Assembly (NCBI RefSeq): GCF_001194135.2
Contig: NC_068984.1
Span: 39,417,891-39,481,890 of the forward strand
Source of the DNA: Octopus bimaculoides
Lineage: Eukaryota
DNA length: 64,000 nucleotides
Direction: 5' to 3'
Shown in pieces: positions 186 through 40,380 of this stretch. Position 1 is the stretch's first letter. Each line of letters opens with the position of its first letter. A program made the translations under genes and the position numbers. Under the pieces are notes generated by a model. The model was given only the letters and a program-made list of their open reading frames with translations. It had not been told where the DNA came from and did no database searches.

Positions 186-1273
186 TATAATATATGCATA
201 TCTTCTTTTCATTTTGTCGTTGCTGTTGTTATTATCGTCATTATTGTTGTTGTTGACATTGCTTTTCTTCAGTGTCATGTTTTTGTGTTTGTAGGGGTTC
301 GTTAAACTCATTTTTCTTCTATGTTATTCGTTGAAGTTAGTTCTGTTAGAATATTTTCCAGATGGATTTTTAAACACTTCTAACCTTGAGTGTACCATTG
401 AAACATAGAGGCAGGCATTGCTATTCATCACCCCGCTTTGGCCACCCTATTATCGTCCCATACTTCTTCAACGCCCTCTACTTTTTCAGCCCCCCTCCAC
501 CTTGGATCTTTCCACTGTCCTAGAGAGCAGTACCGCTAACTTTGGGAATCACTGAATTAGGACTTTGCTTTTGATCTTTTTCAGTGTTGATAACATAGGT
601 CCAATGAAATTCTAGGTTGATATATAATCCATTATATTTCTCTCGTAATTCCTGTTCCTGTATCTGTTATATATCATCATCACGACGATGACATCGTATT
701 CGTCGTCGGCGTCGGCGTCGCTGTCGGCGTCGTCATTATCATTGCAAATAATATGTACTTAAAAATGTTATGTATAATATAGCTTTAAGTGCTTATTTTC
801 TACTTACATATGTTGAGAAAAAATCTGAGAAAGCCTTACCCTGGTTCCATTGAATTTAATTAGAGTACCTGGAATCATATTAAGATAGTTATTGAAGTAA
901 AACATTTAATGTTAACGATGTGCTGAAATATTTAAAATTTAAAAAGAATTTACATTATAATTGCAGATAATTTCACATCAGTTTTTGTATAGCAGATTTG
1001 TACTCCTATATGTATATATAGAGTCATCAGATAAGATCCAAAGATGTTCAGTATAGAACACACGTAGTAATGCTTAAATGATACTCAAATAATTTGAACT
1101 TACACTCCGAAGCCTTTATCGAAGACTGAGTCTGCGGCGTAAAGAGTGGCTATGAGAGAAATCCGGGTGAGCTGATATGGAGACAGTGATGTAGATAAAC
1201 ACCCTCTTTGTTTTGGGCTTGATATACAGAATACACATACATACATACATACATACATACATACATACATACA

Positions 1274-1530
1274 TGGGGCAGAGATGCAGGAAAGCAGTAA
1301 AATGTGACAACCGATGCAGACTTTGTGGAGTTAATACCGAAGATATCACCCACATCGTAAGCAATTATCCGAAAATATCTACTGATGAGACATGATGTTG
1401 TAGCTAGGACACTATATTGAGAAAGGATAACCCCGAGGACAAAGAAATAAGACCCCACAATATGGTGGAAGTCATAGCCACTTATAATAAAAAGGAATAC
1501 TGGTGGTATGTCCAAGTGAAAATCTCAATA
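1274..1530 (+). mobile_element. RLE LINE family B fragment (C-terminal CCHC region), 5' junction in (CATA)n
   Basis: Translates to KAVKCDNRCRLCGVNTEDITHIVSNYPKIS...RHDVVAR...EYWWYVQVK; near-identical to 34720-34990; preceded by (CATA)n 1231-1273. Confidence 0.85.
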
Positions 1531-2613: not shown

Positions 2614-4099
2614 CACACATATGCTCACACGCGCATACATATACACAATAAGATGCTTGGATTTACAGAAACGGCTAATCGTATATGATAAAACAAGGAT
2701 GAAATAGAAATAAACATAAGCATAAAATTATAAAGTATATTAAAGGATATGAAATAACTCACTTTGAAAATGTAACAGTAGTTTTGCAATAAACCCTATT
2801 ATAACAATTATAGCAAAAGTCATATGCAGCTTCTTAATTGAGACCATTTTATTTATCTAAAAAAGAAGAAATAACGTGAAAATTTTGAATGTTAATCATG
2901 ATAATATTTAAGAATGATTATTATTTTTTAATTATTTAACTTGAAATAGGAGTCAAATCTTCAAGTTGTATTCTATCACCTTTAAAAGGGAAGGACAGTA
3001 GAAGACTATGCAGTCTTACAGCCTAAAACTACAGAATGATCATGGCTGGAACACGTCTAATAATAGGTCTGCTGGATCAACAATAAAATCATTATCAACA
3101 AATTCAAACATGAGTAGGGAGGGAATTTTCAAGAGAATCTGATCTCAGGGAAAGAAATGAATATGCAGCATCTTTAGCATGACTTTTGTGGGAGGAAGTG
3201 TTTGACTTATTAAGAATAATGATAAAAGGACATGTAATATAGAGAGTGTAAGCAGCCTTCTAATCCAGACATTAGGAGGCTGCTACAGTAGGAGGGGAAG
3301 AGGTAGAGAGGTAAAACATTGTATGTGTGTCCAGTGGGTACAGCATGTTGAGTTAGTCTTTTCAAATCATCATCAGTGTGGTCTATATTGGATATCACTA
3401 ATATAAAACCGGTACTCAATGTGTATTGCACTTGAGCATTTTAGAGGGTCAGCATCCGCTTTGAGAGGAAATATTTTCTAGCTCTGGAAAGCAAGTCTAG
3501 TGAGATGGCTATGAGAGGCCATTGGAAATTGTGAGTACTAACATCATTGCGTTGTGCTCATACATAAGTTAGTGCAGTGCAAGAACTATTTACACTGATG
3601 TATGAAGAAATTGTTTCTTTGTAATATGAAGGCAAAAGTTGTATGATCTCATTGGACAGTAGTTTAAAGGTCTCTTTTACTCTGGATGAATCTTAAAATG
3701 TGGAATAAAATCTCAGATATTTTTATCAGTATAAAAATTGCTTCGTATGCATGAAGTAAGTCACAAATGGCTGAGTTAATAAAGTGACATATGAATATAT
3801 AAAGCATATATGTAGAGCTCCAGTAGTCTATATAAACTTTAATTTACACCCAGTTCCTAGTATTGATGGGAGATTTAGTGTTATGGCTTGTGAGCCACAG
3901 TATTCTCATGTTGAATTTATAATGCATAATTAATAAGAAGTCATATGCAGCCCACAGACAGGAGGATTTTGATATTTGAGAAAAGAGAAAAGGAGAAATT
4001 GTGACAATTATGCTCTTTTCCTAAGGATATCAATAATGGAAGTGATGTGAGTCCAACGCAAGATTGAATTACAGTCAGACACAGTTTGCCTGCACTTTA

Positions 4100-5420
4100 C
4101 TGCTGACATACAATTGCTTGTGAAAAGGCCATTGGATTCACAATCGTCACCTCTTCCTTGGGAGATGGGACAATTGATTTCTACACAGATTTCTGAGTTA
4201 CACACATACACTTCGAACATCATTGATCTTTATTTTGACTCTAAATGTAAACTCGACCAAACAGACACCATCTCTACATCAATAAGGTCGTCTCACTACT
4301 CTATTACGTCTACCCAACTGCATACCCATATATTATGCAATCTTCCACCCATACACTCTGGCACTTTAAGTCAACTGATTGCTTGAAGCTCTACCAGTTT
4401 TCTACTAATCCTGGCAGCACAAGAAACAGTTAGGTAGATAATTGAAACCGCCCGTTTTCTTTTTTGACAAACGGCCATGCACAACCAAAGCAGCCATCTC
4501 CAAATTTCTAAAGAGGTTCTCTCATAGCTACACTGCAGCGATTCAGGCTAAGAATATAGACTATTACGCTTAGAGGAAACCATCAATTCCTGAACACAGA
4601 ACGACTCTAACACAGCACTACAATTTCTGCAACATCTACATCTAAACCGCACAGTGCTCTTTGTGCATTACTCAGTACGCACACACACATGTCTTTCAAG
4701 CTCCAGTTAATCCTACTTTTAGTTTTGAGTTTAACAAATACTCTACTAACTTGTGGAATCTTTCTTTCATCTACTTTTCAACCATGACAGATCAGCACTC
4801 GAAGAAAGTATCCACATTTACTCCCCACTTCGCAACCAACTGCACACTGCACACACTATGTGCAACTCCTCTAAATAATTTCTTTCCGCAGCACAGGGTT
4901 CATCACTATGCATGCCAAGTGAGAAAATACACTACTTCCGTTCATTTGAAACCAATAACTCTACTGGTTCTGACAATAACACCTTCAACCAATCTGCACC
5001 AAAACTAGCCTCTAGTCTCACCAAACTGTTCAACATCACTTTCTCTATAAGAATGTCTGCTGATTTGGGGGATAACCACAGTATATTCCATTTTCTAGAA
5101 GCATAACCCTTTCGACTTCGCCTACTTCCATCCTGTCGCACTCACTTCCAACATCTCAAAGGTGATGGAGACAACAAAATCTCCTTCAGAGCTTTGAATT
5201 TCTTCTTAATGACCTCCATTACAAGTTTCATAACGCTAGAGCTACTGGAGAGACCTATATCCTATGTCACTCACCAATACGTAGTTACCATCGAGAAATT
5301 CGATGAAATCAGTGATTGGACCTTTAACATCAGCAGAGCTTTTGACTGCATCTGATACGAATCTTGTGGTAAAATTGCCCTCCTATAGTATCCAGGAGAT
5401 TCTGTCGATTGTCTACACTT
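4100..5420 (+). mobile_element. Highly decayed Jockey/CR1-group LINE (end of APE to RT)
   Basis: NIIDLYFDS...SSHYSI (APE end), APKLASSLTKLFNITFS, and FNISRAFDCI (LDISKAFD-like) in decayed frames. Confidence 0.65.
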
Positions 5421-5964: not shown

Positions 5965-6397
5965 TGATTGGGTTATGGGTATTTTTGCCAAATTTGGTGA
6001 AAAATATGTAGTGGTGTATTGAACAGATTTTCACCCTAACCTTAACCCTAACTCTAAAACCCGAACCCTAACCCTAGAACCCTAAAGCTAAAACCAGTAC
6101 AAACGCACGAATGATGTCATAAATAACAGTACCGCCGATAGTTGTTGTTGACAAACAACGGGAGTAATTTCATTCAAGGGAAAAGATCCCATTACACGGC
6201 CACAACGTGTTGTTGACAAACCACAGCAGTAATTGTTTTCACCTCAATAGACGTCAGTGATTGGTTGAAATTACCGAAATACGAAACTTTTGACATGAAA
6301 TAACTTCGAATATAAAATTTTTTCTCTGTTCTATAAGACAAAATATACAAGTATACGAAGTTTTAAAGAGTTTCGGTAGAAAATACACTAAATAAAA
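5965..6397. repeat. Probable non-autonomous DNA element carrying degenerate (CCCTAA)-like repeats
   Basis: ccctaaccttaaccctaactctaaaacccgaaccctaaccctagaaccctaaa at 6034-6095; weak imperfect inverted ends (gggtatttttgcc / ggtagaaaatacac). Confidence 0.4.
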
Positions 6398-6499
6398 ACT
6401 AGATAAAAAATGGTATCCGCCAAATCAGAAAGATCCCCTATTTTTCCCGTACATTGAAAAATATGTGGTGAAAAGATCAATGTGTGGGGGGAGTGAAAT

Positions 6500-7259: not shown

Positions 7260-7618
7260 GCATGCTGGATCATAGACATAGCATGTCCAGCTGACAACAA
7301 GATATTCGATAAGGAAGAAAGAAAACTCTATAGATGACAGGTTAGCTTGGGAGGTTACGCAGTTGTGGACAATGAAAAAGGTGGTAGTGGCACCAATAAC
7401 TGTCGGAGCTCTGGGAACAGTGAGTAAAAATCTTGAGAAGTACTCGCAACAAATAGGGCTGCAATAAGGGTGGAGCACTTGCAGAAAGCAGCAATGCTTG
7501 GAACTGCTTGAATACTCGAAAAATAAGAGGTGTTACCTTAGTTCACTGGTAGCGAGCAGCTGACACCGTAATACATCTCCAGTGTTAGAAGCTGTGCAAA
7601 GACAATAAAATAGTAGTA

Positions 7619-7667
<49 letters not shown>
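7260..7667 (+). mobile_element. R4/Dong-type RLE LINE 3' end with (AAT)n tail
   Basis: IIDIACPADNKI...APITVGALGTVSKNLEKY...HLQKAAMLGTA, short 3' UTR, then (AGT)/(AAT)n 7612-7667. Confidence 0.85.
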
Positions 7668-7669
<2 letters not shown>

Positions 7670-8400
7670 GGAAGGAAAAGAATTGTACGGTCAGTTTGCA
7701 AGAGATGTGAATGCTAAGATAGATACAGAGGACGAATGTCTATGGATGAGAAGTGACCTGAAGATAGAGACTGGAGCATTCATATGCGCAGCTCAGGAAC
7801 CAACTATATGAAGCGCAGAATAGACAACATTACCGATAGCGACAAACGCAGAATGTGTGGTGAGAAAGGTAAAACGTTATGGCGCATCGTGAGGAAATGC
7901 CCGAAATTTGCACAACGCGAATAAAAAAGACGCATGACAATGTAACAAGAATGATCCATTGGGAGCTGTGTGGAAATCACGGCCTACAAAGAACAAAGAC
8001 ATGTTATGAGCAAACCCCTGAAGGAGTTACCGAAAATGAGAATTGCTAAATCTTGTGGGATGCAATGATCCAGTGCGATCACCCGACCAGACATCGGAAA
8101 CCGGATATTATTGTGGTGGATAAAAAAAGAAAGAACATGTATGATAATCGACATACCATGCCCCGGTGACAACAGGATCAATGTGATAGAAGAAAAAATA
8201 AATAACTATGACGATTTGAAGTGGGAAATAGGAAAGTTGTGGTCAATGAAGAGAATAAACGTGATATCTATAGTAATTGGTGCACTGGGAAGTATCAGCA
8301 CTCAACTACCAGCATGGCTAAAAAAGATTGGTGCAAATTCTTGCTTAGAACTGCAAGAATTCTTCGCAGGATGCTTGAAGTATGGCCAGTAAACAAATTC
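7668..8400 (+). mobile_element. 5'-truncated R4/Dong-type LINE (CCHC + RLE domain)
   Basis: WKEKELYGQFARD...RMCGEKGKT...RHDNV...RKPDIIVVDKKERTCMIIDIPCPGD...IVIGALG; begins immediately after the (AAT)n tract. Confidence 0.9.
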
Positions 8401-8439
8401 AGTTAAAAAAGTAATCGCTGTAAAAACGAAGAGAAAGAG

Positions 8440-11260
8440 AAAGAACGGTGGCCAGATAATCTTAAATACTATGAAATAGATGATTTATGATTTACACACA
8501 CTACTATGCAACACTCTTCCAAAAACATACAAAAATAAACTCGTACCGTAAATACCCAACAAAATAAACAAAGCCCACATGTGCCATAAAAGGCACAACC
8601 TGCGCTGCAGAAACAACATGCAGTACAAAAACCAATACAACAGAAGACTAAAAAAGCCCATAACAAAGCATACTGATACAATAAAACATGACCCCATCAA
8701 AAAATAAATGCTGCATATCCCAGCGCAAAGGTTCAACAAATGATGCAAAATGAAAGTCGCTTGAAATTTTCAGATGTCGGAAAGTAATAGAGATGATGAC
8801 ATCGGCAACGAACTTTACCTTACCTCAGTTTATGAGAGACAGGAGTTTCCGAAGAAACTCTGATAGTAACTGCGAAAATGAAGCTGGACCATTAAAAGAA
8901 TGCTTCTCACTCAGCAGTGGTTCAGTAAAGATGCAGACTGACCACAACTGTTATCCTAATGCAGCATCAGCAGTTAACAGAGTAAAGAGGGGGAAGTGGA
9001 CCAGCGAAGAAAACAAGATAGTGATACAGTGCTACTTGTAAAATGAACATAAAAGAAAGGGCTATAAAAAACGGATGTTAACACTTTGGGTAGAGAAGGA
9101 CATGTTTAAAGTGACTGAACAGAGATTAGTAGATCAAGCTATTGCTATTTGAAGAAAGTGGATGACAGAATTAGAGGTAGAAGAGATCACAATAGAACTG
9201 GAAAGGAAAGGCCAGGCAGTAGGAAAGACAAACAACAATATCAGAGATACAGCTCAAACCAAAGCAGAATCTGAAGGAAAAAATAGTAGCGCTACCAATA
9301 AGAAAGGGGAAACTGGCACCAGCGACTTTAGTGATTTAAGTGAGGAAGATCAGAAGATTTTTAGATGAGTTGCATAACGTAATGAGTAAACAAGTATGAA
9401 AAAGATTGCCAACACCAAAATGCATCATCAGTAGAAAGCTATAAGAACTGACTAGTAAAGTAGATTTTGTTATCAATAGGATAGATACTAAAAATATAGG
9501 AGAAACTAGCTTATTGATCTCTGCAGGAGGCGTAATAGTCGCTAGAAGATTAGATATCTCACGGGAAAAGATTAAAAAAGAGCAAATGTGGGAAAAAGAC
9601 TACAAAATAAAGTGAAGATTTTAAGACAAGATCTGAGCAGAATTGAAGCCTGGAATCTGAACAAGTTAGGAAACACAAGTTACAAATCTTCCCTTCATAA
9701 AAGATAGTTAGGCAAAGAGAAAGGATTTGGGACAGAAATAAAATAGATCAGTATCAACAAAATAGATTGGAGACAGACCAGAGTAGATTTTATAACCAAA
9801 TAAATAGTGGAGAACGAAGTACTGAAGATGAGAAACCTAATGCAGAAGAAGCTAGAAAGATCTGGAGTAATATTTGGGATAAGCTAGTCAATCATAATGG
9901 GGATGCAGTATGGTTAAAGAAAGTGAGTAAGGAGCAGCCAGGTCTAAGATTAACTAGTGCATTAATAAGTAAAGTGTTAAGAAAAATGCCGAATTAGAAG
10001 GGCCCAGGACCAGATATAGTTCAAGGGCACTGGCTAAAGAAATCCAGTAGTTTACATTGGAGGGTGAGGGAACAACTTCAGGATTGCCATAATGGGAGAA
10101 TAATACCAGATTAGATTATTAGATTATTACATATGAAAGATAAGAGCAAGCGTAACACAGCTAGCAACTGTAGACCAATCACTTGCTTACCATTAGCGTG
10201 GAAGCTGTTAAGAGGAATGCTTTGAGAAAGCATTTACGAGCAACTTGACAACCAGAATTCACTGCCAGAACAGAATGGTTGCAGGAAGGCTAGAGGAACG
10301 CATGATCTATTATACATCGACAAAGCATTTTTAAATGAAGTAAAAGCTAGAAAGAAAAATCCACCAATAGCATGAACAAACTATAGGAAGGTCTATGACA
10401 TGATCCCACACTCATGGATAAGTGAATGTTTTAGTACATACAGTATCGTAGACTGCATAAAATAATTAATTAGCTTTAGCATGAAGAAATGGAAAGTAGG
10501 TCTCTGCTCAGATGACACTCTTAGGGAAATTAATATCAAACGAGGAATTATTCAGGGGGACTCGTTGTACCCTTTAATATTTGTCTTTAGTTTGATCCCC
10601 CTCAGTTTAGTATTAAGGAAAGAAAATGTAGGATGTCAGCTCAGAAATAGTAATGGAAAAATTAAACATTTGCTCTACATGGATAATCTGAAGCTTTTTA
10701 GTAAGAATGAAAAGAGATATATTCCTTAATACAAGCAGTAAGACAATTTAGAGCAAAGATGTAGGTATGGAGTTTGGCATAGTTAAGTGTGCAATATTAG
10801 TCATGAGACGGGGACAGGTAGTCAACAGCGAAGGCATCCAATTACCATATGGCCTGACATTAATATCATTGAAAAGAGGAGAAAGTTATAACTATCAAGG
10901 AGTATTAGAATGTGACAGAGTACTAACTATAGAAATGGAAACGAAAATTGAGAAAGAGTACATCAGAAGGGTGAGGAAGCTAACGAAGTCAAAGATAAAT
11001 GGTCCGAGTCTAGTGAAGGCTGTAAATACTTGGTCGGTATCATTACTCAGTAGCTTTTGTAGGTTGGACAAAAACTGAATTAGCAAAGCTAGACAGAAGA
11101 ACTAGGAAGCAATTTGATATGAATGGAGGACTCCACTCAAAGGCAGGAGTAGCAAGATTATACTTACCTAGAAAGGAAGGTGGAAGAGGGTTAATATCAG
11201 TAGAAGACTGCGTGGAGTTATCTAGAGTAGATATAGACTCCCATGTAGGTAATAGTGAAG
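8440..11260 (+). mobile_element. R4/Dong-type LINE with 5' UTR, N-terminus and RT; 3'-truncated, many stops and frameshifts
   Basis: KWTSEENKIVIQCY, VTEQRLVDQ, GPGPD, RPITCLPL, RGIIQGDSLYPL, HLLYMDNLKLF, AVNTWSV, RLYLPRKEGGRGL. Confidence 0.92.
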
Positions 11261-11264
11261 GGTT

Positions 11265-13290
11265 AACCCTAAACAGACAGATCCGTCCCCTAATGTCAAC
11301 GTCTAAGCTCGTCATGCCTCAATGATAACAAAACAAATACAAACCAGATTAGCCGTCAACTGGAACACCAAGGACCGCGTACTCGAATGATGAACCATGT
11401 TGGGTATGAAAAAATCAGCTACTGGTTCAAATTTTCCCGAAACACAGCAGCTGAAAGTAGCCCACAACCAGAATATTCCAACAGATGGCCATCCATGGTC
11501 GTGATCAAATAGCCAAAAGAAAAAAAAATGAAAATGGTCTAGGGGAGATAATAAAAAAGTTCATAAGCCATTCTAACATGTCATGTATTTTTCCACAAAT
11601 AAATCAAATACTGGACAAACTTACTTAAATTGGAGACAGAAACAAACATTATGAAAAAGAAATTACTAACTGAATCAGAGATTGACCAAATTAAACAATC
11701 AGTTAAAGATAAAGGGAACGAAGTTGTAGCTAAAGAAGATACTACAGAGGAAATCATTATAGACCAACCCAAGTTTGATGAAAACGCAATAATGATTGAA
11801 AGAGTTAATGTAACTGATAAGCAAAGTGAAATACTCTCTGAACCAAACAGAAACACTAAGGCAGATGAAAATCAAATAGATGAAGAAAGCCACACAGAAA
11901 TTGATCTAAAACATCAAATCATGATTGAATGCCTGAAAACTAAAGAAACCAGTATGAATGAACGCGACATTCTCCCAAAAATTCGCAATTCTAACCAAAA
12001 CATGAAAGTAATTGGTAAAATCCGCCTTGCGCTTAAGGATATAATTTCAGCTAATGATGTTGATATTAAAGATCTCAACCACCTGTACTATGCATCCGCG
12101 AAAATCTCAACGATTCTACGCGCATTCAACACCAAATTAAGCTACTTAAGTCTGACATAGATTGTTTAAAAAAACCATAAGTTTGACAAGACTATCAAAC
12201 CAACAAAAATCCGAAACTTAAAGAAAAATATATAATGTGAAAACCATACTTGACATCGATACCACCATAGAAACTATCAATCAAAAGGTATGTGCTAAAG
12301 CTGCGCACGTAGCTTGGTATGAAAAGCGCGTTAGACTCTTCAAGAACATGTTAAAAAATAACCCAAAAATTTTTTACACGAAGATAGGGAAAATACCAGT
12401 TACAGTAATGTCTGTCCTATCAAAAGAAGAAATGCAGGAATTTTGGAATAAAATTTGAGCAGAAAAACAACACACAGTGAAAAGGCCCCTTGGATTGATA
12501 GAATATCTACAGATTTAGACTCCTTAGAAGAGCAAAAGTGGGAGGGCATCAAGGTAGAGGATGTAAGATCTGCTCTCAGAAGTCAAGCAAATGGAAGTCT
12601 CCAGGAAAGGATAAAATTCCTAACTTCTGGTTGAATGAATGCCTTCCTAGAGAGCCATGAACTGCTAAAAAAAACTTTACAATAATGTTTTTGCAACAAC
12701 CTAGTATGATTCTCACTTGGCTAGTTAATGGTGTAACATTCCTACTTCAAAAAAAAATGAAGAAACAAATTAACCAAAAAATTATAAACCCATAACCTGC
12801 TTAACAACAATGTATAAAATACTAACATCTGTCTTGACTGAATATACCTATAGTTTTTAATAGAAAGGGGGATATTCCTAATGAGCAAAATGGATGTAAA
12901 CGCGGGTCCTATGGTTGTAAAGATCAGCTACTCATCAATAAGATGAATTTGGAAAATTGTCACAAATGACACAAAACTTGTCGATAGCCTGGATAGACTA
13001 TAAAAAAGCTTTTGATAGTCTACCACATAGCTGGATTAAGAAATGTCTGGAAATGTATAAAATAGCACCTGCTCTGCAAAACTTCTTGTCAGTAAGTATG
13101 AGATCATGGATAACCACACTGACTTCGAACAGTGACAATGAATCTCACAGTGCTGGAGAGGTAAGAATTTCATATCGCATTTTCCAAGGTGACTCTCTAT
13201 CACCACTCCTCTTTTGTCTAGCCTTAATGCCTCTTTCGAAATTGCTCGATGATGTACAATACAGCTATAAAATCTTTGATAAAAATTCTG
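11265..13290 (+). mobile_element. Second R4-type LINE family: N-terminus and RT to just past QGDSLSP; 3'-truncated
   Basis: ORFs 11630-12160, 12237-12458, 12957-13313: AWIDYKKAFDSLPHSWI, IFQGDSLSPLLFCLALMPLS; also WKSPG and NYKPITCL. Confidence 0.9.
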
Positions 13291-27330: not shown

Positions 27331-28894
27331 AATAATCACCATAATTTGTGGTGAATACATACCATACTAATATATTACTTTATTCTTATCTACGCCGCCT
27401 CCGGGCGGTTTCCTCGTCGTATTACATTTACACAATTGCTTTCCAATTTGTGTAACTATTCGATATTACGTATTACTTTCCTTTGTATCCCTTATTTACC
27501 TAATTGTACTTACTCGCTCAGTAAATAAATTTAAGGCGCAACTACAGTGCTCTGTGGACATTGCTCATAGAAATGGATTTTTGTTAATGAAATTTTCTAC
27601 AAATACATTTCAGATAGTTGTTGATTATGATTATATCGAAATTTGTTGTGAATAATTTGGGGGAAGGGAGAGGAGAGGAGTTTCGGATAATTCACGCGCC
27701 GTGATTTTGTTTTCTCATAACTTTCAGAAAAATTAGTATTTTCCTACATTTTAAATTTTCTATAAATACTTTTCAGATGGTGTAGATTACAGTTATATTG
27801 AAATTCAATGTGAAAAATATGGGTGGGGAATATTTCATATATGTTAGCTTTGTTTCCTCATACACTTTGATGATTTAATTACAATTATGTTCAAAACATA
27901 CTTTTTAGGCCCACGTGATCCCTGCTATTTCTAGAATACTAAACAACCACATAGAGGATGGGTCGCCTATGAGTGTTTAAAAGAGGGAGATTAAGCTTGC
28001 TGTTGATATTATTTGATGATGAAATATCATCTGTAAAATTATTTGAACAACCCATTTTGATGTTTTACCACGGGTGGAACTTACTTATAATGTTGAGTCT
28101 GTTCGCAAAGGTAGTTTCTCTTTTCCTTCTTATGGCTGTTAAACGTTCTGGATTCTTTCTAATAACATTTGTTATGATTGTCAGTAACATAGCTAGGGGT
28201 AAGGTGCGGGGGCTGTGATCCGCCTCGGTGACGCTTTTATGTAGGCGGTACTGTTTGGCCTGCTGTATAAACCTGCATAGGCTGTATTGCTCCGGGCTAG
28301 GTGTAAGGGAAAACTGAAGAGCTTCTCCAGGCAACATAAGCTTTAGCTATTCCACTGATGATTAAGTAGTTATATTTTACTCATTTTAATTAGGAATGTA
28401 ATCACAAAATAGCATTTATTAGTCAGTGTGTAATTAAATTTTGGTTTTGGTCGATTGAAACTATGAATTCTCTCACTTACCCCTTTTGAGAATCAATTTT
28501 CATTGTTGTTAATAAATATCTTTTTGATTAAGGTTGTAATTTTAATTAATTCAAAACTATTTATAATAATTATAAAATTATTCACCAGGAAAGCACACTT
28601 AGAATATATTCTAAATCATTATTTTGAATTTCCGAATGAGTGAATTTTCTTCATTCTAAAACTAATTTCTCTTAGAAATTATAGCTGTCACTATAGCTAC
28701 CAAACATGAGAGACACTCACTCAACGACAGAAGTATTGACTGATCTTTATCTTGCGTGTGTAAGAAGTTTACTTCTGTGTCTGTTCACATACATATATGT
28801 ATGTATGTATGTAAAACAATTAATAAATGAGTGATAAATGATGTATGTATGTATGTATGTATGTATGTATGTATGTATGTATGTATGTATGTAT

Positions 28895-29850
28895 CTTAAA
28901 TCACTAGAGTCGCTGGTGCCAGTTTCCCCTTCCTTACTGGTAGCGCTATTATTATCTTTTCCTTTAGGTTCTTCTTTGGTTTGAGCTGTAGCTCCTATGT
29001 GGTTGTTTTTCTTTCTCGCTACCTGGTGTTTCCTTTTTGTTCTCTTATGATCTCTTCTGCCTCCAATTCTGTCATCCACTTTCTTCTCCTAATAGCATTT
29101 GCTTAATCAACTAATCTCTGCTCAGTCACTTTAAACATACCCTTCTCTATCCAAAGTGTTAACATCCGTTTTCCATAGCCCTTTCTTTTAGGTTCATTTT
29201 CTAAGTAGAACTGTATCACTATCTTGTTTTCTTCGCCGGTTCACTTCCTCCTCCTTCTTGCTCTATTAACTGCTACTGGTGTATTGGGATGACAGCTGTG
29301 GTCAGTCTGCATCTTTACTGAACCACTGCCGAGCGAGAGGCCACCCCTTAAAGGTCCAGCTTCATTTTCGCAGTTACAATCAGAATTCTTCGGAAACTCC
29401 AATCCCCCATAAACTGGGGTAAGGTAACGTTCGTCACCATCGTCATCAGCGCTATCATTTCTCGACATCTGAAAGTTTCAAGCAACTTTCTATTGCACCA
29501 TTTATTACACCTTTGTGCTGGTGGAGTGGTGTGTGCTGCATTTTATGTGGGACGGGGATATTGTATTGTATCAGTACGTTTTGTTATGAGGTTTTGTTTA
29601 AGTTTTCTGTTGTTTAAGATTTTATAATGGGTGTTGTTTTTGTAGTGCAGGTTGTGTTTTTCTGTCGGATATCGGCCTTCTATGGCACATGGGTTTTGTT
29701 CATTTTGTTGGGTATTTACAGTATGAGTTTATTCTTGTATGTTTTTGGAGAGGTGCTGCATAGTAGTGTGTGTGTGTGTGTGTGTGTAACTCCTAAATTA
29801 ACTATTTTGTAGTATTTATGATTATCCATCTGTCGTTCTTTTACTTGGTT
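28895..29850 (-). mobile_element. 5' UTR and N-terminus of the R4/Dong family seen at 8440-9360
   Basis: Colinear homology (CENEAGPL, SGSVKMQTDH, EQRLVD, GETGTSD); 5' end abuts (AAT)n 29870-30020; ends at (CATA)n. Confidence 0.9.
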
Positions 29851-33591: not shown

Positions 33592-33900
33592 TGAATCCAA
33601 ACAAAGAAGAACAAACAAGAAGTGAGAATAACGCGTGGACGTGGTACAAGTACTGAATTATCAGACGCTCAGGAAAGGAAGGAAAGAGGATTTAACGTTT
33701 CGAGCCAAGCTCTTCTTCAGAAATAGAGGAAATAGCAAGTAGTGTTTGAAATGGAGGCAGGAACCATAAATGGAGGCAGTAACCATAAATCTCACGTCGG
33801 GAATTTAATAATCCTGGTTTCAGGGAATGTTTGAGGATCTTTGCTCGCTCAGCTAAACATTGCTTGCAGCGTCCGCTCACGTTGATATGGGATCCTAGCC
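33590..33900 (-). mobile_element. Penelope-like 3' end (GIY-YIG C-terminus + tail)
   Basis: CKQCLAERAKILKHSLKPGLLNSRREIYGYCLH, followed by the tail with a hammerhead motif. Confidence 0.8.
33690..33724 (-). ncRNA. Minimal type I hammerhead ribozyme motif
   Basis: ATTT-CTGAAGA-A-GAGC(TTG)GCTC-GAAAC-GTT-AAAT: intact core, stem II, palindromic AACGTT stem III, 4-bp stem I. Confidence 0.7.
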
Positions 33901-34129
33901 GCTCTATGACCTGTGTAATGTAATGATCCAGTGCGATCACCCCACCAAACATAGGAAACCGAACATTGTATGATTATCGACATAACATGCCCCGGTGACA
34001 AGATCTTTTTCTTCTGTACTTTACCAGATGTAATAAGCTGTCCAGAACTTTTTCAAGTGTAATAACTTGTCCTGTAATTCTCCAGGTTTATAATCTTAAG
34101 AATATTATTTCTCTTACTCGCATTTTCCC

Positions 34130-35640
34130 ATTTAATAATAATTGATACACTTGATTTTTTGAGTAAGTGCCTCAGTGACAATCTCGATAAGCAAGGGTTT
34201 TCAGAAAACGAAATCAATCAGCTAACACGTACATTACAAATACATTCTATATCTAATTTCAACAATGAGGATATGTATTTTTGTTAGAACCTAGTTCCTT
34301 CCTTACTGGAAGAGTTGAAATAATTAAAAATAGAACAGAATATACATACATACATACACACATACACACATACATACATATATACATATATACATACATA
34401 CTCACATGCATACACACACATACATACATACATACATACATACATACATACATTCATACATACATACATACATACATACATACATACATACATACATACA
34501 TAGAAGTCGCACGACTCTACCGCAACATATCATCAGATGGAAGGATGAGCCTATATCACCAGAAGACTATGCATGGATATGTTAGTAGAAAGCTATGTGA
34601 TAATAATAACATCGATCATCAAAGCAGTTTATCATGGACGAATAGACGCATTACTACATCCCACTTTAAATGGTACGAGTTTGCAATCCAGGAACAGGAA
34701 ATATCAACCAAGTACCTGATGCACAAAAGGGATGGAGATGCAGAAAAAGCCGTAAAATGTGACAACAGATCCAGACTTTGAAGAGTTCACACTGAAGATA
34801 TCACACACATCATAAGCAGTTATCTACCGAGGAGACATGACGTTGTAGCTAGGATACTCTATAATGATATCCGTCGGAAGGATAATCCCGAGGACAAAGA
34901 AATATAAACCCATAATACGGTAGAAGCCATAGCCACTCATAATAAAAAGGAATGCTGATGTAATGTACCAGTGAAGATCTCAATAAAATGTAAGCACAAC
35001 AGACCTGATATAATGATTTGGGATAGAGAAAAGAAACTGGGCACAGTTGTGGAAATTAGCTGCCCACTGGATGTTAACATAAAGCTGAGGATCTGTGAAA
35101 ATGAGAACATCTACGCTGAAGTATTGAGAAATTTGTAGTTACTCTATCCAGATTACAAGTTCAGGTTTATATCTGTAATTATTGGGGCCCTGGGATATGT
35201 AACACACTGCCTAAATAGCAATTTTGGGAAATTAGGCTTCTCAGAACCAGAAAGGAGAAAGCTAATTCGAAGTCTACAGATCCAATCCATCACTGGAACT
35301 ATAAAAATCTGTAAAACTTTCCAGAAGTTTATCATTTAAATATATATGAGCATGTCTAGATATATATGCAGCTATATGCATGAGAATACATACATAAAAC
35401 ATACAAATTTGCACATACATACATGCATATATACATACATACAAACATGCATACATACATACATACATACATACATACATACATACATACATACATACAT
35501 ACATACATAAATGCATGTTTTACCCCGTAAGGGAGATACGTGAGTGTTGTATACATAAAACCGAATAAGGTATAGTTGGTAGAATTTAACTTGCGCGTGA
35601 AACAATCGAAAACCATGACAATCTCACTTTACTCTTTGAG
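34130..35640 (+). mobile_element. RLE LINE family A 3' end, split in its internal (CATA)n by a family B insertion
   Basis: 34130-34340 and 35527-35640 match 36700-37010 and 37116-37229 respectively. Confidence 0.85.
34503..35405 (+). mobile_element. RLE LINE family B, 5'-truncated, about 0.9 kb
   Basis: FAIQEQEISTKYL, CDNRSRL, RHDVVAR, CKHNRPDIMIWDREKKLGTVVEISCPLDVN, IGALG, SITGTIKICKTFQKFII*; (CATA)n on both sides. Confidence 0.92.
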
Positions 35641-36117
35641 TCAGCCAATCAGTAAACGTTCCGTTGCCATTCTCAAAACTGCTTTTAAATAATCACAAAT
35701 ACATTCGCAGACATACATACACGGATGCACACTCAAATACAATGAAGATTAGAATCGCAAAAAAGTTTTACGATATCACCATTCTTACATATATTTCCAA
35801 AAAACCTATCTACACACAACTTAAATGAAACTTGGAAGCAGTAGAAAATATGTCCCTGAACTCGAAATTCATATGAAGCCAGTAGGGTTTTTAATGACTT
35901 TATTCAAGGTTTGACCTAACCAAAGACATCAAAATGAAATTGTAACATGATTTGGAATTCTCCGTCTGTGATCTCGAAATAATCCAAGCTACGAGTAATT
36001 TGGTAAGTTTTTCATTTTTGGATTCTTCTTGTCTGTATAATTTGAGAAATGATGCAGCGAATATGCAAGATTGAACAAAAGGTCGAAAGATTTGATACAA
36101 ATAAGAAATTACAAAAG

Positions 36118-36149
<32 letters not shown>

Positions 36150-36415
36150 TGGAGCATATCTTGCAAAGGACTGTCATGAAAAATGACTGTTCGAATAAAA
36201 AGATCTTAAAAAAGATCTTGGAAATGAATGTGTATGATTATGCATGCATACGCACGCACGCACACACATACACACACAAACACACACACACACACGCACA
36301 GCACACAAAATATACATAATACATACATACATACATACATACATACATACATACATACATACATGCATGCATACATACATACATACATACATACATACAT
36401 ACATACATACATACA

Positions 36416-37230
36416 GAAAAGCATGCATATAGAAAACCCACCCGTTATTGAATACATACATACACATTCACTCAAAGAATACTGGCGAAACATTCCCATC
36501 AAAACTTCTACTAAGTACAAACAGAACAGGCTGGATATTGCTGTTTGAAAAAGTCAAGAAAAAATATGTACCATCATTAAAGTCAGCTGCTCTGATGATA
36601 TGAATGTCTCTTCGAGAATCAAAGAGAAAGTGAATGATTACGGACAACTGCTTCGAAAACTGCAGCTTCTATGCCCATACTATAAATTCACATTTGTATC
36701 AATAATAATTGCTGCACCTGATTTTTTGAGTAAATGCTTAAGTGACAATCTCGATAAGCAAGGGTTTTCAGAAAATGAAATCTATCAGCTAATACGTATA
36801 TTACAAATACATTCTATAAATAGAACATTTTGAACTTGAAAATGGTCTTGCATACTTTTATATGCAAGACCATTCTCAAGTTAAAAATGTGAATTTATTT
36901 TAATTATCTAATTTCAACGATGGAGATATGTATTTTTTGTAACAAACTAGTTCTTTCCTTACTGGAAGACTTGAAATAATTAATAATAGAATAGAATATA
37001 CATACATACACACATATACACATACATGCATGATGCATACATGCATGCATACATACATGCATACATACATACATGCATACATACATACATACATACATAC
37101 ATACATACGATGTATGTAAGGAAGATACGTTAGTGTTGCATACATAATACTGAATAAGGTGTAGTTGGTAGAATTTAATTTGCGTGTAAAACAATCTAAC
37201 ATCAGGACAATTTCACTTTACTCTTTGAGC
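36416..37230 (+). mobile_element. RLE LINE family A, 5'-truncated, uninterrupted 3' UTR with hairpin and internal (CATA)n
   Basis: EYWRNIPIKTSTKYKQNRLDI, IKEKVNDYGQLLRKLQLLCPYYKF; preceded by (CATA)n. Confidence 0.9.
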
Positions 37231-37711
37231 CACTTTTTTTTCAAATATTATTCTTTTCTAAGTTTTATATTAATCAAAACTAAGCAATAAAACGTGCAAT
37301 ACATACCTAGTTTCTGGAGAAAAAGAGGAGTCTAAAGTATTGTGAGTTCTACACACAATGATTGCCTTTGTCAGAATTCTAAATAAATGGTTGTTTTTGG
37401 TGGTCAATAGCATAGTTTGAACAGCTGGTTGCAGAAAGGACACACAGTAATGCAACTATTAGAGCGTTACTCGCCAACATTTTGACTTATAAAGATTTCA
37501 ATATTTCTTAAATACTGACAGAGGAAACACATATTCAATAAAACAACAGCACTTTATACTTGCATAGCTTTATCGGAACCTACTTTAATATAAACATATG
37601 GACAAGGGCGGTTTATTTCAGCTAAACATCCATAATGATCAATACTTACAATATTGAATCTCAGATTTCTTCAGATTTGTGCATAAATGTGGAAAATATA
37701 TAATTTGCATA

Positions 37712-39322: not shown

Positions 39323-39856
39323 TGTATGTATGTATGCATGCATGTATGTATGTATATTGATTTATTGATTTGGTTATTTAATGAATATTTATTTTTTATG
39401 AAAATCTTTACACCTTCAGTCTGTAATTATGAATAACATAACACTTAACTGTGAAGGTCTCATATGGCTTAAGCATAACCAAAGTCGTCTCTATACATTT
39501 CAAAGATCAGATTGGCTCCTTATTGCTTAAGCCTCACATTCAAGTAAATCAATTTCAATTTCCAAAGTTTCTGTCCTATCTTCCTTGACAATAAATATCA
39601 TTAAACCTAATAACTTTATTCTTCATCACGAATGAAACTTTAATTGCTTGGACTTTGTGGTTCACTCTATCAATTGTACACATAGACATATACCCACGCA
39701 GACACAGGTACACACCTAGTCATACGTATAGATATAGAGGTAAAAAGACATATACATAGATCTATATACACATATATATAGAGAGAGAGACACACACACA
39801 CACACACCTACCTACCTACCTACCTACCTACATACATACATACATACATACATACA

Positions 39857-40380
39857 ACTGACCTGATATAATGATTTGGGATAGAGAAAAGAAACTGTGC
39901 ACAGTTGTGGAAATTAGCTGCCCAGCGGATGTTAACATACAGTGAAAAAGAGAACACTTATGCTGAACTATTGAGAAATCTGTAGTTACTCTTTCAAGAT
40001 TACAAGTTCAGGTTGATACCTGTAAGTATTGGGGCCCTGAGATGTAACACACTACCTAAATGCCAATCTTGAGAAATTAGACTTCCTAAAACCAGAAAGG
40101 AGAAAGCTAATTCGAAGACTACAGATCTAATCCATCACTGAAACTGTAAAAATCTGTAAAACTCTCCAGAAGCTTATCATTTAAATATATGTGAGCATGT
40201 CTAGATATGCAACTATATGCATGAGAATACGTACATAAAACATACAAATCTGCACATACATACATACATACATACATACAAACAAAAATACCTGTTGTTG
40301 ATGTTGAAATTTCAATGAAGGAGCCTTGGATCTAGGTTAGAAATAGGCTCTTCCTCTATTGGCATGAAATCTTGACATAT
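39857..40380 (+). mobile_element. RLE LINE family B, 5'-truncated, with 3' UTR (CATA)n
   Basis: Matches 35005-35420; 5' junction in (TACA)n 39829-39856; (CATA)n 40255-40279. Extension of the UTR to about 40380 is inferred. Confidence 0.88.

What the first reader, a model, noticed from the sequence alone, without database searches (positions are those of the whole stretch)
34130..37230. RLE LINEs that carry their own target: family B nested in the (CATA)n of family A's 3' UTR, with an empty-site control in the window
Seen: the family A copy at 36416-37230 reads RLE end - UTR - (CATA)n - post-repeat block (gtaagg.agatacg...tttactctttgag, 37116-37229). The copy at 34130-35640 has the same left part (34130-34340) and the same post-repeat block (35527-35640), but 0.9 kb of family B lies inside the (CATA)n. 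Family B also has (CATA)n in its own 3' region (35405-35508, 40255-40279). Inference: each new copy creates a new landing pad, giving a self-feeding cycle that could help explain the abundance of (CATA)n. Known: Dong (R4 clade) targets TAA repeats. I know of no described RLE element that targets CATA, but I could not search.
Basis: partly seen in the sequence, partly recalled or inferred. Interest (0 to 1): 0.78.

Follow-up and report, generated by a model that had tools for sequence, protein, structure and literature searches.

The report
Octopus LINEs that insert into CATA repeats
Dead copies of two related jumping genes that land in, and end with, the simple repeat CATACATA sit here one behind the other; this is a new target for a known kind of repeat-seeking element, and the idea that the first element carries the repeat inside itself does not hold up.

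Summary
The sequence observation is correct. A1 (36416-37229) and A2 (34125-34341 plus 35527-35640) are 88-91% identical, and a 0.9-kb family B copy (34503-35404) sits in the CATA tract of A2 only.

Both families are LINEs with a C-terminal CCHC knuckle and a restriction-like endonuclease (RLE). B has a few thousand copies.

The (CATA)n targeting is well supported:
- Four of five 5' ends in the window abut (CATA)n directly.
- Every intact 3' end runs into (CATA)n.
- Relatives from other organisms are embedded in (CATA)n or (ACTT)n on both sides. One pair of relatives is 86% identical in protein yet uses different repeats.

One part of the reading is probably wrong. The 114-bp "post-repeat block" has two copies in this species and one in each of three related species, while A's distal UTR has tens of copies. 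The block is therefore most likely flanking DNA that was copied together with A, so A ends in (CATA)n just as B does. B1 simply landed in the tract behind A2. This is the only one of four 5' tracts that belongs to an earlier copy, so the "self-feeding" idea rests on little here.

Microsatellite-specific RLE LINEs are already known (Dong on TAA, Togen on TG). This is a new member with a new target.

The parts
34125..34341 (+). A2: 5'-truncated fragment of LINE family A (last ~50 codons of the RLE ORF plus the 3' UTR)
   Evidence: 88.8-91.3% identical to A1 36687-36997. No similarity upstream of 34125. Translation is ..DFLSKCLSDNLDKQGFSENEINQL..LQIHSI.
34342..34502 (+). (CATA)n tract: tail of A2 plus the remainder of the target, and the 5' flank of B1
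   Evidence: TRF period 4, 40.8 copies. B1 begins at 34503, directly after ...CATACATA.
34503..35404 (+). B1: 5'-truncated dead copy of LINE family B (thumb end, CCHC knuckle, RLE domain; stop codon at 35338-35340; ~65-nt 3' UTR)
   Evidence: The translation contains in-frame stops and a deletion at 34821. Best named protein hit is O. bimaculoides LOC106878562, 67% identity. tblastn to P0019 aa 362-647. Read depth rises from ~300 to ~2450 toward the 3' end.
35405..35509 (+). (CATA)n tail of B1, continuous with the rest of the interrupted tract
   Evidence: The loose-end consensus of B reads across the genome runs from the UTR into ..GCACATATACATACAT.
35527..35640 (+). Post-repeat block, A2 copy: low-copy DNA, most likely flank copied together with A
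   Evidence: 87.7% identical to 37116-37229. Exactly two contigs in organism A. No A2-type copy in organisms B, C or D.
36312..36415 (+). (CATA)26, the 5' flank of A1 (free compound microsatellite with (CA)n at 36253-36307)
   Evidence: TRF, 96% matches. A1's ORF similarity starts at about 36420.
36416..36997 (+). A1: 5'-truncated dead copy of family A (RLE domain end plus 3' UTR), carrying an 88-bp palindromic MITE-like insertion at 36818-36905
   Evidence: Translation ..EYWRNIPIKTSTKYKQNRLDIAV*..IIKVSCSDDMNV..KEKVNDYGQLL... tblastn to P0019 aa 513-637, 49%. The insertion is absent from A2.
36998..37108 (+). (CATA)n tail of A1, uninterrupted (the paralogous 'empty site' for B1)
   Evidence: TRF, 28 copies. 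Orthologous contigs of organisms B and C read (CATA)n-CGATGTG in front of the block.
37116..37229 (+). Post-repeat block, A1 copy: single-copy flank conserved in all four organisms
   Evidence: One raw read at about 0.7x coverage. In organisms B, C and D it is the only block copy. Where the loose end is listed (C and D) it runs straight into A1's 3' flank CCACTTTTTTCAAATATTATTCC.
39790..40284 (+). B2 with its flanks: (CCTA)n(CATA)n at 39790-39856, B2 body at 39857-40253, (CATA)n tail at 40254-40284, then unique DNA
   Evidence: There is no block after the tail.
1235..1530 (+). B3: (ACAT)10 at 1235-1274, directly followed by a family B fragment (CCHC region) that is cut off at 1530
   Evidence: 85.8% identical to B1.

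Best explanation
What is there:
- A and B are two related families of non-LTR retrotransposons of the R2-like group. They have a single ORF: RT, then a CCHC knuckle, then a C-terminal restriction-like endonuclease. They most probably correspond to what RepeatMasker calls Dong-R4 in octopus.
- They integrate into (CATA)n microsatellites, and their RNA ends in (CAUA)n.

Inferred mechanism:
1. The endonuclease nicks within the repeat.
2. The exposed (TATG)n 3' end pairs with the RNA's repeat tail and primes reverse transcription.
3. Copying usually stops early, giving 5'-truncated copies.
4. The new copy ends up with the repeat on both sides.

History of this locus:
1. An A copy landed in a long CATA tract whose downstream flank is the 114-bp block (this is A1).
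2. Its 3' 0.31 kb, together with the tract and the block, was later copied 1.5 kb upstream. The route was either DNA-level duplication or read-through (3') transduction. This is A2.
3. A B copy then landed in A2's tract.

All copies in the window are dead: they are truncated and carry stop codons.

Shown versus inferred:
- Shown: the anatomy, the homologies, the copy numbers and the junction contexts.
- Inferred: the nick site, tail-to-target pairing, and the route by which A2 arose.
For: RLE LINE identity:
- CCHC and RPD..E..K motifs are present in B1, A1 and all homologues.
- Full-length relatives carry RVT_1 upstream.
- Their RT and CCHC regions align to solved R2 proteins at E 1e-24.

Family behaviour: B read depth climbs from about 300 at the 5' end to about 2450 at the 3' end at roughly 0.7x coverage. 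That is a few thousand copies with a 5'-truncation gradient.

Targeting in the window:
- The 5' ends of B1, B2, B3 and A1 directly abut (CATA)n, each at a different truncation point. Three of these tracts are free microsatellites.
- The tails of B1, B2, A1 and A2 are all (CATA)n in sense polarity.

Targeting in relatives:
- L006: (CATA)50 | element | (CATA)3.
- L003 and L010: UTR followed by (CATA)44-60.
- L010 and L011: a second copy, with its 5' UTR and ORF start, begins right after the CATA tract.
- L004, L007, L008, L009: the same architecture in (ACTT/TTAC)n.
- L004 and L006 have homologous 3' UTRs and 86% identical C-terminal protein, but different repeats.

The block is flank:
- Two copies in organism A, one copy in B, C and D, and one raw read.
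- By contrast, A's distal UTR has about 30-130 copy equivalents and its ORF end about 100-200.

B1 is an insertion: the paralogous tract in A1 is uninterrupted.
Against: - No genome-wide census of 5' junctions could be made. The loose-end tables were dominated by indels and Hi-C bridge adaptors.
- A2's own 5' end is not in CATA. Three relatives' 5' ends are not in a repeat either (L001, L003, L010 copy 1).
- Two copies that share a 3' end but differ in 5' end is also the classic signature of independent LINE copies, so the block could be A's real terminus in a very small subfamily.
- The copy-number contrast partly rests on an AT-rich, low-complexity stretch (34300-34345) and on summed contig depths.
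- Divergence is even across the ORF end, UTR and block (8.7-12.3%), so it does not discriminate between the readings.
- Assignment to the R4/Dong clade was not tested by phylogeny.
Confidence: 0.65

Rival explanations
1. Family A's 3' UTR contains an internal (CATA)n followed by a 114-bp terminal block. A1 and A2 are then two independent retrotranspositions with different 5' truncation points, and B landed in the internal repeat of one of them.
For: A1 and A2 end at exactly the same base (...TTTACTCTTTGAG) and start at different points (36416 and 34125). There is no similarity in the DNA beyond either end. That is how two 5'-truncated LINE copies look.
Against: - The block has only two copies in the genome, 1.5 kb apart and in the same orientation, and one copy in each of three related organisms.
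- Tens of copies share A's distal UTR.
- Neither 3' junction would lie in CATA, although A1's 5' junction does, which does not fit insertion at a single nick site.
- B and eight relatives all end directly in the microsatellite.
Confidence: 0.2
2. There is no target specificity. (CATA)n would be only a 3' tail made by slippage of the reverse transcriptase, as in CR1, L2 or RTE-like LINEs, and the CATA tracts at 5' ends would be tails of earlier, eroded copies or coincidence.
For: LINE tails are a known source of microsatellites (PMC3812793, PMC2887409). One of the four 5' tracts (B1's) is indeed the tail of another copy. A2, L001, L003 and L010 copy 1 lack a 5' repeat.
Against: - Four of five 5' ends in the window and seven of eleven in related loci abut the cognate repeat within 0-2 bp, at different truncation points.
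- The 5' tracts of B2, B3 and A1 are compound free microsatellites, such as (CCTA)n(CATA)n and (CA)n(CATA)n, with no LINE upstream.
- The 5' tracts are often much longer than the 3' tracts (L006: 200 bp against 12 bp).
Confidence: 0.05
3. The A2-B1-block arrangement is not an insertion. It would have arisen by ectopic recombination, or by repair using another template, between CATA tracts of separate A and B loci.
For: Long CATA tracts (100-160 bp) on both sides of B1 are good recombination substrates. The whole segment is absent at the orthologous place in organisms B and D, so this region is structurally unstable.
Against: It needs two exchanges that restore A's flank exactly. B1 has the same structure (CATA | truncated body | UTR | CATA) as B2, L006 and L009, which are ordinary insertions.
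Confidence: 0.07

Closest known systems
Dong (R4 clade RLE LINE; Bombyx mori, Anopheles, Biomphalaria), specific for (TAA)n
   Same: Single-ORF LINE with a C-terminal CCHC knuckle and restriction-like endonuclease. It is embedded in a microsatellite on both sides (PMC3812793, PMC4640811). Dong-R4 is the abundant RLE LINE class annotated in octopus genomes (PMC13282606, PMC8967140). Dong-like pieces next to (TAA)n lie in this same window.
   Different: The target and tail here is the tetranucleotide (CATA)n, not (TAA)n. The C-terminal protein is only about 30% identical to the window's TAA-associated elements. Clade membership by RT phylogeny was not tested.
Waldo (R1 clade, APE-type LINE; Anopheles, Forficula), specific for (ACAY)n
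   Same: The same or an overlapping microsatellite target, since ACAT is a form of ACAY (PMC3812793).
   Different: Waldo has an N-terminal APE endonuclease and belongs to the R1 clade. The octopus elements have a C-terminal RLE and align to R2 proteins. Any shared target is convergent.
Togen (NeSL-related, (TG)n) and the microsatellite-specific HERO families
   Same: RLE LINEs that target microsatellites (PMC4640811).
   Different: Different repeats. The relationship to A and B is untested, so HERO membership cannot be excluded with these tools.
R2 (28S rDNA-specific RLE LINE)
   Same: The RT, CCHC and RLE architecture. P0022 aligns to R2 structures 9nl2 and 9dou at E 1e-24. The insertion mechanism is target-primed reverse transcription.
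   Different: R2 targets a unique rDNA site and has N-terminal zinc-finger and Myb domains. In the D-type Dong-like element of this window and in relatives L010 and L011, the N-terminal region shows a Myb/SANT-like stretch but no zinc finger. The target here is a simple repeat.

Membership tests
RLE-type (R2-group) non-LTR retrotransposon | Reverse transcriptase domain upstream of the endonuclease in one ORF | tested here: met
   Full-length relatives P0022, P0068 and P0027 carry Pfam RVT_1 (E 3e-27 to 9e-37) N-terminal to the region homologous to B1. The window copies themselves are truncated downstream of the RT.
RLE-type (R2-group) non-LTR retrotransposon | C-terminal CCHC knuckle followed by a PD-(D/E)xK-like restriction-like endonuclease | tested here: met
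   CRLCxxxxEDxxHIxxxC, RHD, and NRPDI..W..(x)..IExxCPxDxN..K.EK motifs are invariant across homologues and recognisable in B1, B3 and A1. The CCHC region aligns to R2 structures. No Pfam model covers the RLE part.
RLE-type (R2-group) non-LTR retrotransposon | Shared 3' end with variable 5' truncation across many copies | tested here: met
   Read depth rises about 8-fold from the 5' to the 3' end of B1. B1, B2 and B3 start at three different points.
R4/Dong clade | RT-domain phylogeny groups the element with R4, Dong and Rex6 | not testable with these tools
   No reference sequences of R4, Dong, Rex6, HERO or NeSL were available. The assignment rests on octopus repeat annotations that list Dong-R4 as the abundant RLE class (PMC13282606).
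R4/Dong clade | Dong's own target, (TAA)n | tested here: not met
   A and B are flanked by (CATA)n. Other RLE LINE pieces in the window (7285-8392; 30452-28895 on the minus strand) are the ones next to (AAT/TAA)n.
Microsatellite-specific LINE (functional class) | Both junctions of individual copies lie in the same microsatellite, with fixed polarity | tested here: met
   True for B1, B2 and A1 in the window, and for L004, L006, L007 and L009 elsewhere. All have the repeat in sense polarity.
Microsatellite-specific LINE (functional class) | Genome-wide majority of junctions in the repeat, compared with control elements | not testable with these tools
   Only 5 window copies and 11 related loci could be read. 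Summaries of laid reads did not expose 5' junctions.
Waldo (R1 clade) | N-terminal apurinic/apyrimidinic-type endonuclease | tested here: not met
   The endonuclease is C-terminal and of RLE type. Pfam finds no Exo_endo_phos domain in P0022, P0068 or P0019.

The most novel reading that the evidence does not exclude
In this clade, the choice of target is set largely by the few repeat units at the 3' end of the RNA, through pairing with the nicked repeat, rather than by the endonuclease. A change of tail would then retarget the element from one tetranucleotide repeat to another.

The main evidence is one pair of relatives. L004 uses ACTT and L006 uses CATA, yet they have homologous 3' UTRs and 86% identical C-terminal protein.

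Because every copy lengthens or seeds a tract, these LINEs, at a few thousand copies, would be a real contributor to the abundance of (CATA)n in octopus genomes.
Probability: 0.3. Interest if true: 0.62.

Novelty: new member of a known kind. Interest (0 to 1): 0.4.

Why it matters
This gives the abundant, reportedly still active octopus 'Dong-R4' LINEs a concrete integration rule. They go into (CATA)n and come out flanked by it. That rule explains why these copies stack in tandem, and it affects repeat annotation and microsatellite marker design in cephalopods.

The comparative set offers a natural experiment on how site specificity evolves in RLE LINEs. It holds the same element architecture in CATA, ACTT and ACAG tracts, including a pair that is 86% identical in protein but uses different repeats. 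This group is currently of interest as a source of programmable insertion tools.

The finding does not reveal a new kind of system.

Tried and rejected
All later stretches had to stop at the repeats, so no read or contig spanning a junction could be examined.
2. I tried to read genome-wide 5' junctions of B from 'loose ends'. The few rows shown were taken up by indels of B1 against the family and by a palindromic bridge adaptor (GGTTCGTCCATCGATCGATGGACGAACC) of what are evidently Hi-C-type libraries.
3. Pfam gave nothing for the RLE region.
4. Two protein searches found only one octopus protein (P0006), and its locus L001 has uninformative junctions.
5. I considered that the absence of the A2 segment in organisms B and D was a 29.5-kb deletion joining 6143 to 35663 at a GTTG microhomology. 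I dropped this because 6092-6450 is a repeat with 1e5-1e6 summed depth, so the 21-mer only marks a copy of that repeat.
6. I looked for A homology upstream of A2, behind the SINE-like repeat. There is none; 33900-34001 is a fragment of a different Dong-like family.
7. Uniformity of A1/A2 divergence across the ORF end, UTR and block (8.7%, 11.2%, 12.3%) does not separate duplication from retrotransposition.
8. Literature searches found no (CATA)n- or (ACAT)n-specific RLE LINE. Repbase and Dfam could not be searched.
Full report
**1. The observation**

- A1 spans 36416-37229. It holds the C-terminal part of an ORF, a short 3' UTR, an imperfect (CATA)28 at 36998-37108, and a 114-bp block at 37116-37229.
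- A2 is split in two. Its left part, 34125-34341, aligns to A1 36687-36997 at 91.3% (ORF end) and 88.8% (UTR). Its block, 35527-35640, aligns to 37116-37229 at 87.7% without a gap.
- Between the two halves of A2 lie (CATA)40 (34342-34502), a 0.9-kb family B copy (B1, 34503-35404), and (CATA)~26 (35405-35509).
- The window holds two more B copies: B2 (39857-40253, 90.9% identical to B1) and B3 (1275-1530, 85.8%).
- A1 carries an 88-bp palindromic insertion (36818-36905) that A2 lacks.

**2. What the elements are**

- B1 translates, through three stop codons and one deletion, to a CCHC knuckle (..CDNRxRLxRVHTEDITHII..) followed by NRPDIMIWD..VVEISCPLDVN..EN.Y... A1 shows the same endonuclease motifs.
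- Homologues found by protein search share these motifs as invariant columns.
- A profile search found 6316 relatives at E up to 0.001. The full-length ones (about 1,000-1,200 aa) carry Pfam RVT_1 upstream of this region.
- One full-length relative (P0022) aligns over its RT and CCHC to solved R2 retrotransposon proteins at E 1e-24.
- Pfam has no model for the endonuclease part.
- The only named close relative is an Octopus bimaculoides protein (67% identity over the BLASTP alignment; 75% over shared alignment columns).
- Published octopus repeat annotations list Dong-R4 as the abundant and recently active RLE LINE class: 5 families and 1129 recent insertions in O. vulgaris (PMC13282606; also PMC8967140). 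Assigning A and B to that clade is an inference. I could not run the RT phylogeny.

**3. Copy number**

- Raw reads of the same species were laid at about 0.7x coverage and at least 80% likeness. Depth on B1 rises from about 300 at its 5' end to about 2450 near its 3' end. Two other runs give about 3900-4300 at 85% or more.
- That corresponds to a few thousand copies with the usual 5'-truncation gradient.
- The consensus of reads leaving B's UTR is ..AAACATACAAATCTGCACATATACATACAT, so the family runs into CATA genome-wide.

**4. Targeting of (CATA)n**

In the window:
- The 5' ends of B1, B2, B3 and A1 lie at four different points of the ORF, and each directly abuts a CATA tract in sense polarity.
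- Three of these tracts are free compound microsatellites with no LINE upstream: (CCTA)n(CATA)n, (CA)n(CATA)n, and a plain (ACAT)10.
- All four intact 3' ends run into (CATA)n.
- Seven of the ten CATA arrays in the window, holding 75% of the CATA bases, touch an A or B copy.

In relatives fetched from other organisms, the same architecture recurs:

| Locus | Context |
|---|---|
| L006 | (CATA)50, then the element, then (CATA)3 |
| L003, L010 | UTR followed by (CATA)44-60 |
| L010, L011 | a second copy (5' UTR and ORF start present) begins right behind a CATA tract |
| L002 | ends in (ACAT)2(ACAG)n |
| L004, L007, L008, L009 | embedded in (ACTT/TTAC)n; L007 has a UTR-only copy stacked behind the first |

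The 5' ends of L001, L003 and L010 copy 1 are not in a repeat.

L004 (ACTT) and L006 (CATA) have clearly homologous 3' UTRs and 86% identical C-terminal protein. The repeat used can therefore change between very close relatives, and the tail changes with it.

The mechanism below is inferred by analogy with target-primed reverse transcription in R2 and was not tested here:
1. The endonuclease nicks within the repeat.
2. The exposed repeat end pairs with the RNA's repeat tail.
3. Reverse transcription is primed from that end.
4. Copying aborts early in most events, which gives the 5' truncations.

**5. The post-repeat block**

- Raw reads put only one read on 37098-37340.
- Assembled contigs of a deep run of the same species show exactly two block copies. 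One is identical to the A2 locus (depth 38.6) and one is the A1 type (depth 54.4).
- Three related organisms each have a single copy, the A1 type. The contigs of organisms B and C show (CATA)n-CGATGTG in front of it, and those of C and D run straight into A1's 3' flank.
- By contrast, A's ORF end (34175-34249) sums to about 100-200 copy equivalents and its distal UTR (34275-34345) to about 30-130. Consistent consensus differences and several length variants of the proximal UTR are seen among these copies.
- A LINE's 3' terminus cannot be rarer than the UTR in front of it. The block is therefore most likely unique DNA that flanked the microsatellite hit by A.
- It follows that A1 and A2 are two copies of one insertion locus, produced by DNA duplication or by read-through transduction.
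- This also fits the geometry of insertion at a single nick. A1 then lies between two CATA tracts, like B1, B2, L006 and L009. If the block belonged to A, A1's 5' junction would be in CATA while its 3' junction was not.

Caveats:
- Part of the distal UTR is AT-rich and of low complexity.
- Summed contig depth is only a proxy for copy number.
- Two copies with a common 3' end and different 5' ends is also what independent LINE copies look like.

**6. Order of events and cross-species check**

- Orthologous DNA of organisms B and D differs from the window by about 3.6%, while A1 and A2 differ by 9-12%. The A1/A2 split therefore predates these species.
- Even so, B and D lack the A2-type block. 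Directly upstream of 35663 they read the end of a hugely abundant repeat instead. The A2 segment was either lost there or lies in a rearranged context.
- As a result, no orthologous empty site for B1 is available.
- A1 still serves as a paralogous uninterrupted tract, which makes insertion of B1 into A2's tract the simplest reading. Ectopic exchange between CATA tracts cannot be excluded.

**7. The 'self-feeding' idea**

- Tandem stacking inside one tract is real (B1 behind A2; L007, L010, L011). The window's TAA-associated Dong-like elements do the same (7285-9340; 30452-28895 on the minus strand).
- In this window, though, only one of four 5' tracts is an earlier copy's tail.
- Whether the elements create tracts or only exploit and lengthen them remains open.

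**8. Comparison with known systems and novelty**

- Microsatellite-specific RLE LINEs are established: Dong on (TAA)n, Togen on (TG)n, and some HERO families (PMC4640811, PMC3812793).
- ACAY repeats are the known target of APE-type Waldo elements (PMC3812793).
- Seeding of microsatellites by LINE tails is also known (PMC3812793, PMC2887409).
- I found no description of a (CATA)n-specific RLE LINE, and no statement of this rule for octopus Dong-R4 elements. Repbase and Dfam could not be searched.
- Verdict: a new member of a known kind, with an interesting comparative hint that the RNA tail may set the target.

Noticed in passing
window 7285-11300 (+) and 30452-28895 (-): Other RLE LINE pieces, about 30% identical in protein to A and B, are associated with (AAT/TAA)n, the classic Dong target. 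On the plus strand: an RLE end at 7285-7458, (AAT)21 at 7604-7667, a truncated copy at 7677-8392, then a 5' UTR, Myb-like N-terminus and RT from 8455. On the minus strand: an RLE end, (AAT)50 at 30020-29869, then the 5' end of another copy. This is tandem stacking in a different repeat.
   Followed up: partly
window 28841-28895 (-): The Dong-like 5' fragment (29850 down to 28895) breaks off in mid-ORF exactly at an (ACAT)13 array. Its paralogue at 8455-9340 continues through this point. No A or B body is attached, and the cause is unexplained.
   Followed up: no
window 36818-36905: An 88-bp palindromic insertion in A1's UTR that is absent from A2. It is flanked by TA and its read depth is about 35 at 0.7x coverage. 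It looks like a small MITE.
   Followed up: partly
window 6092-6450, 33600-33732, 34012-34137: Extremely abundant short repeats, with summed contig depth of 1e5-2.5e6 against a unique depth of about 50. They are probably the octopus SINEs. The one at 34012-34137 ends at 34136/7 in most copies and forms A2's 5' boundary.
   Followed up: partly
window 33900-34001: A fragment of yet another Dong-like family (..CMIIDITCPGD..). It is 86% identical to 8054-8109 and is cut off at 34001.
   Followed up: no
window 33750-35662 compared with organisms B, C and D: Related organisms have no contig for 33750-33774 and no A2-type block. In B and D the unique DNA from 35663 onward is preceded by the end of the abundant 6123-type repeat. 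This is a lineage-specific structural difference that covers the whole A2-B1 composite.
   Followed up: partly
L004 5789-5995 compared with L006 4897-5085: Two relatives have homologous 3' UTRs (core CCTTGTTCTATGGTTTAGAACCGG...AATAATGGAATATAT) and 86% identical C-terminal protein. One ends in (ACTT)n and the other in (CATA)n. This looks like a recent switch of repeat.
   Followed up: partly
L007 5690-5860; L010 3017-3800; L011 5111-5600: Tandem stacking in other organisms. L007 has a UTR-only copy behind the first copy within (TTAC)n. In L010 and L011, the 5' UTR and ORF start of a second copy begin directly behind a (CATA)15-44 tract.
   Followed up: partly
L003 2990-3330 and 4130-4420: The 3' UTR of this relative holds a 16-bp minisatellite (GTCTATATTGTCTGRG)n. 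About 400 bp past its CATA tail there are (TTAGGG)n telomere-like arrays.
   Followed up: no
L001 4100-5900 (O. bimaculoides CM046628.1): The one annotated octopus B-like ORF (LOC106878562) is a truncated copy lying inside a decayed array of C2H2 zinc-finger repeats. It is probably annotated as a gene by mistake.
   Followed up: no
runs X21-X23: Many reads carry the palindrome GGTTCGTCCATCGATCGATGGACGAACC. These 'GENOMIC OTHER' libraries are proximity-ligation (Hi-C-like) libraries, so chimeric reads are to be expected.
   Followed up: no
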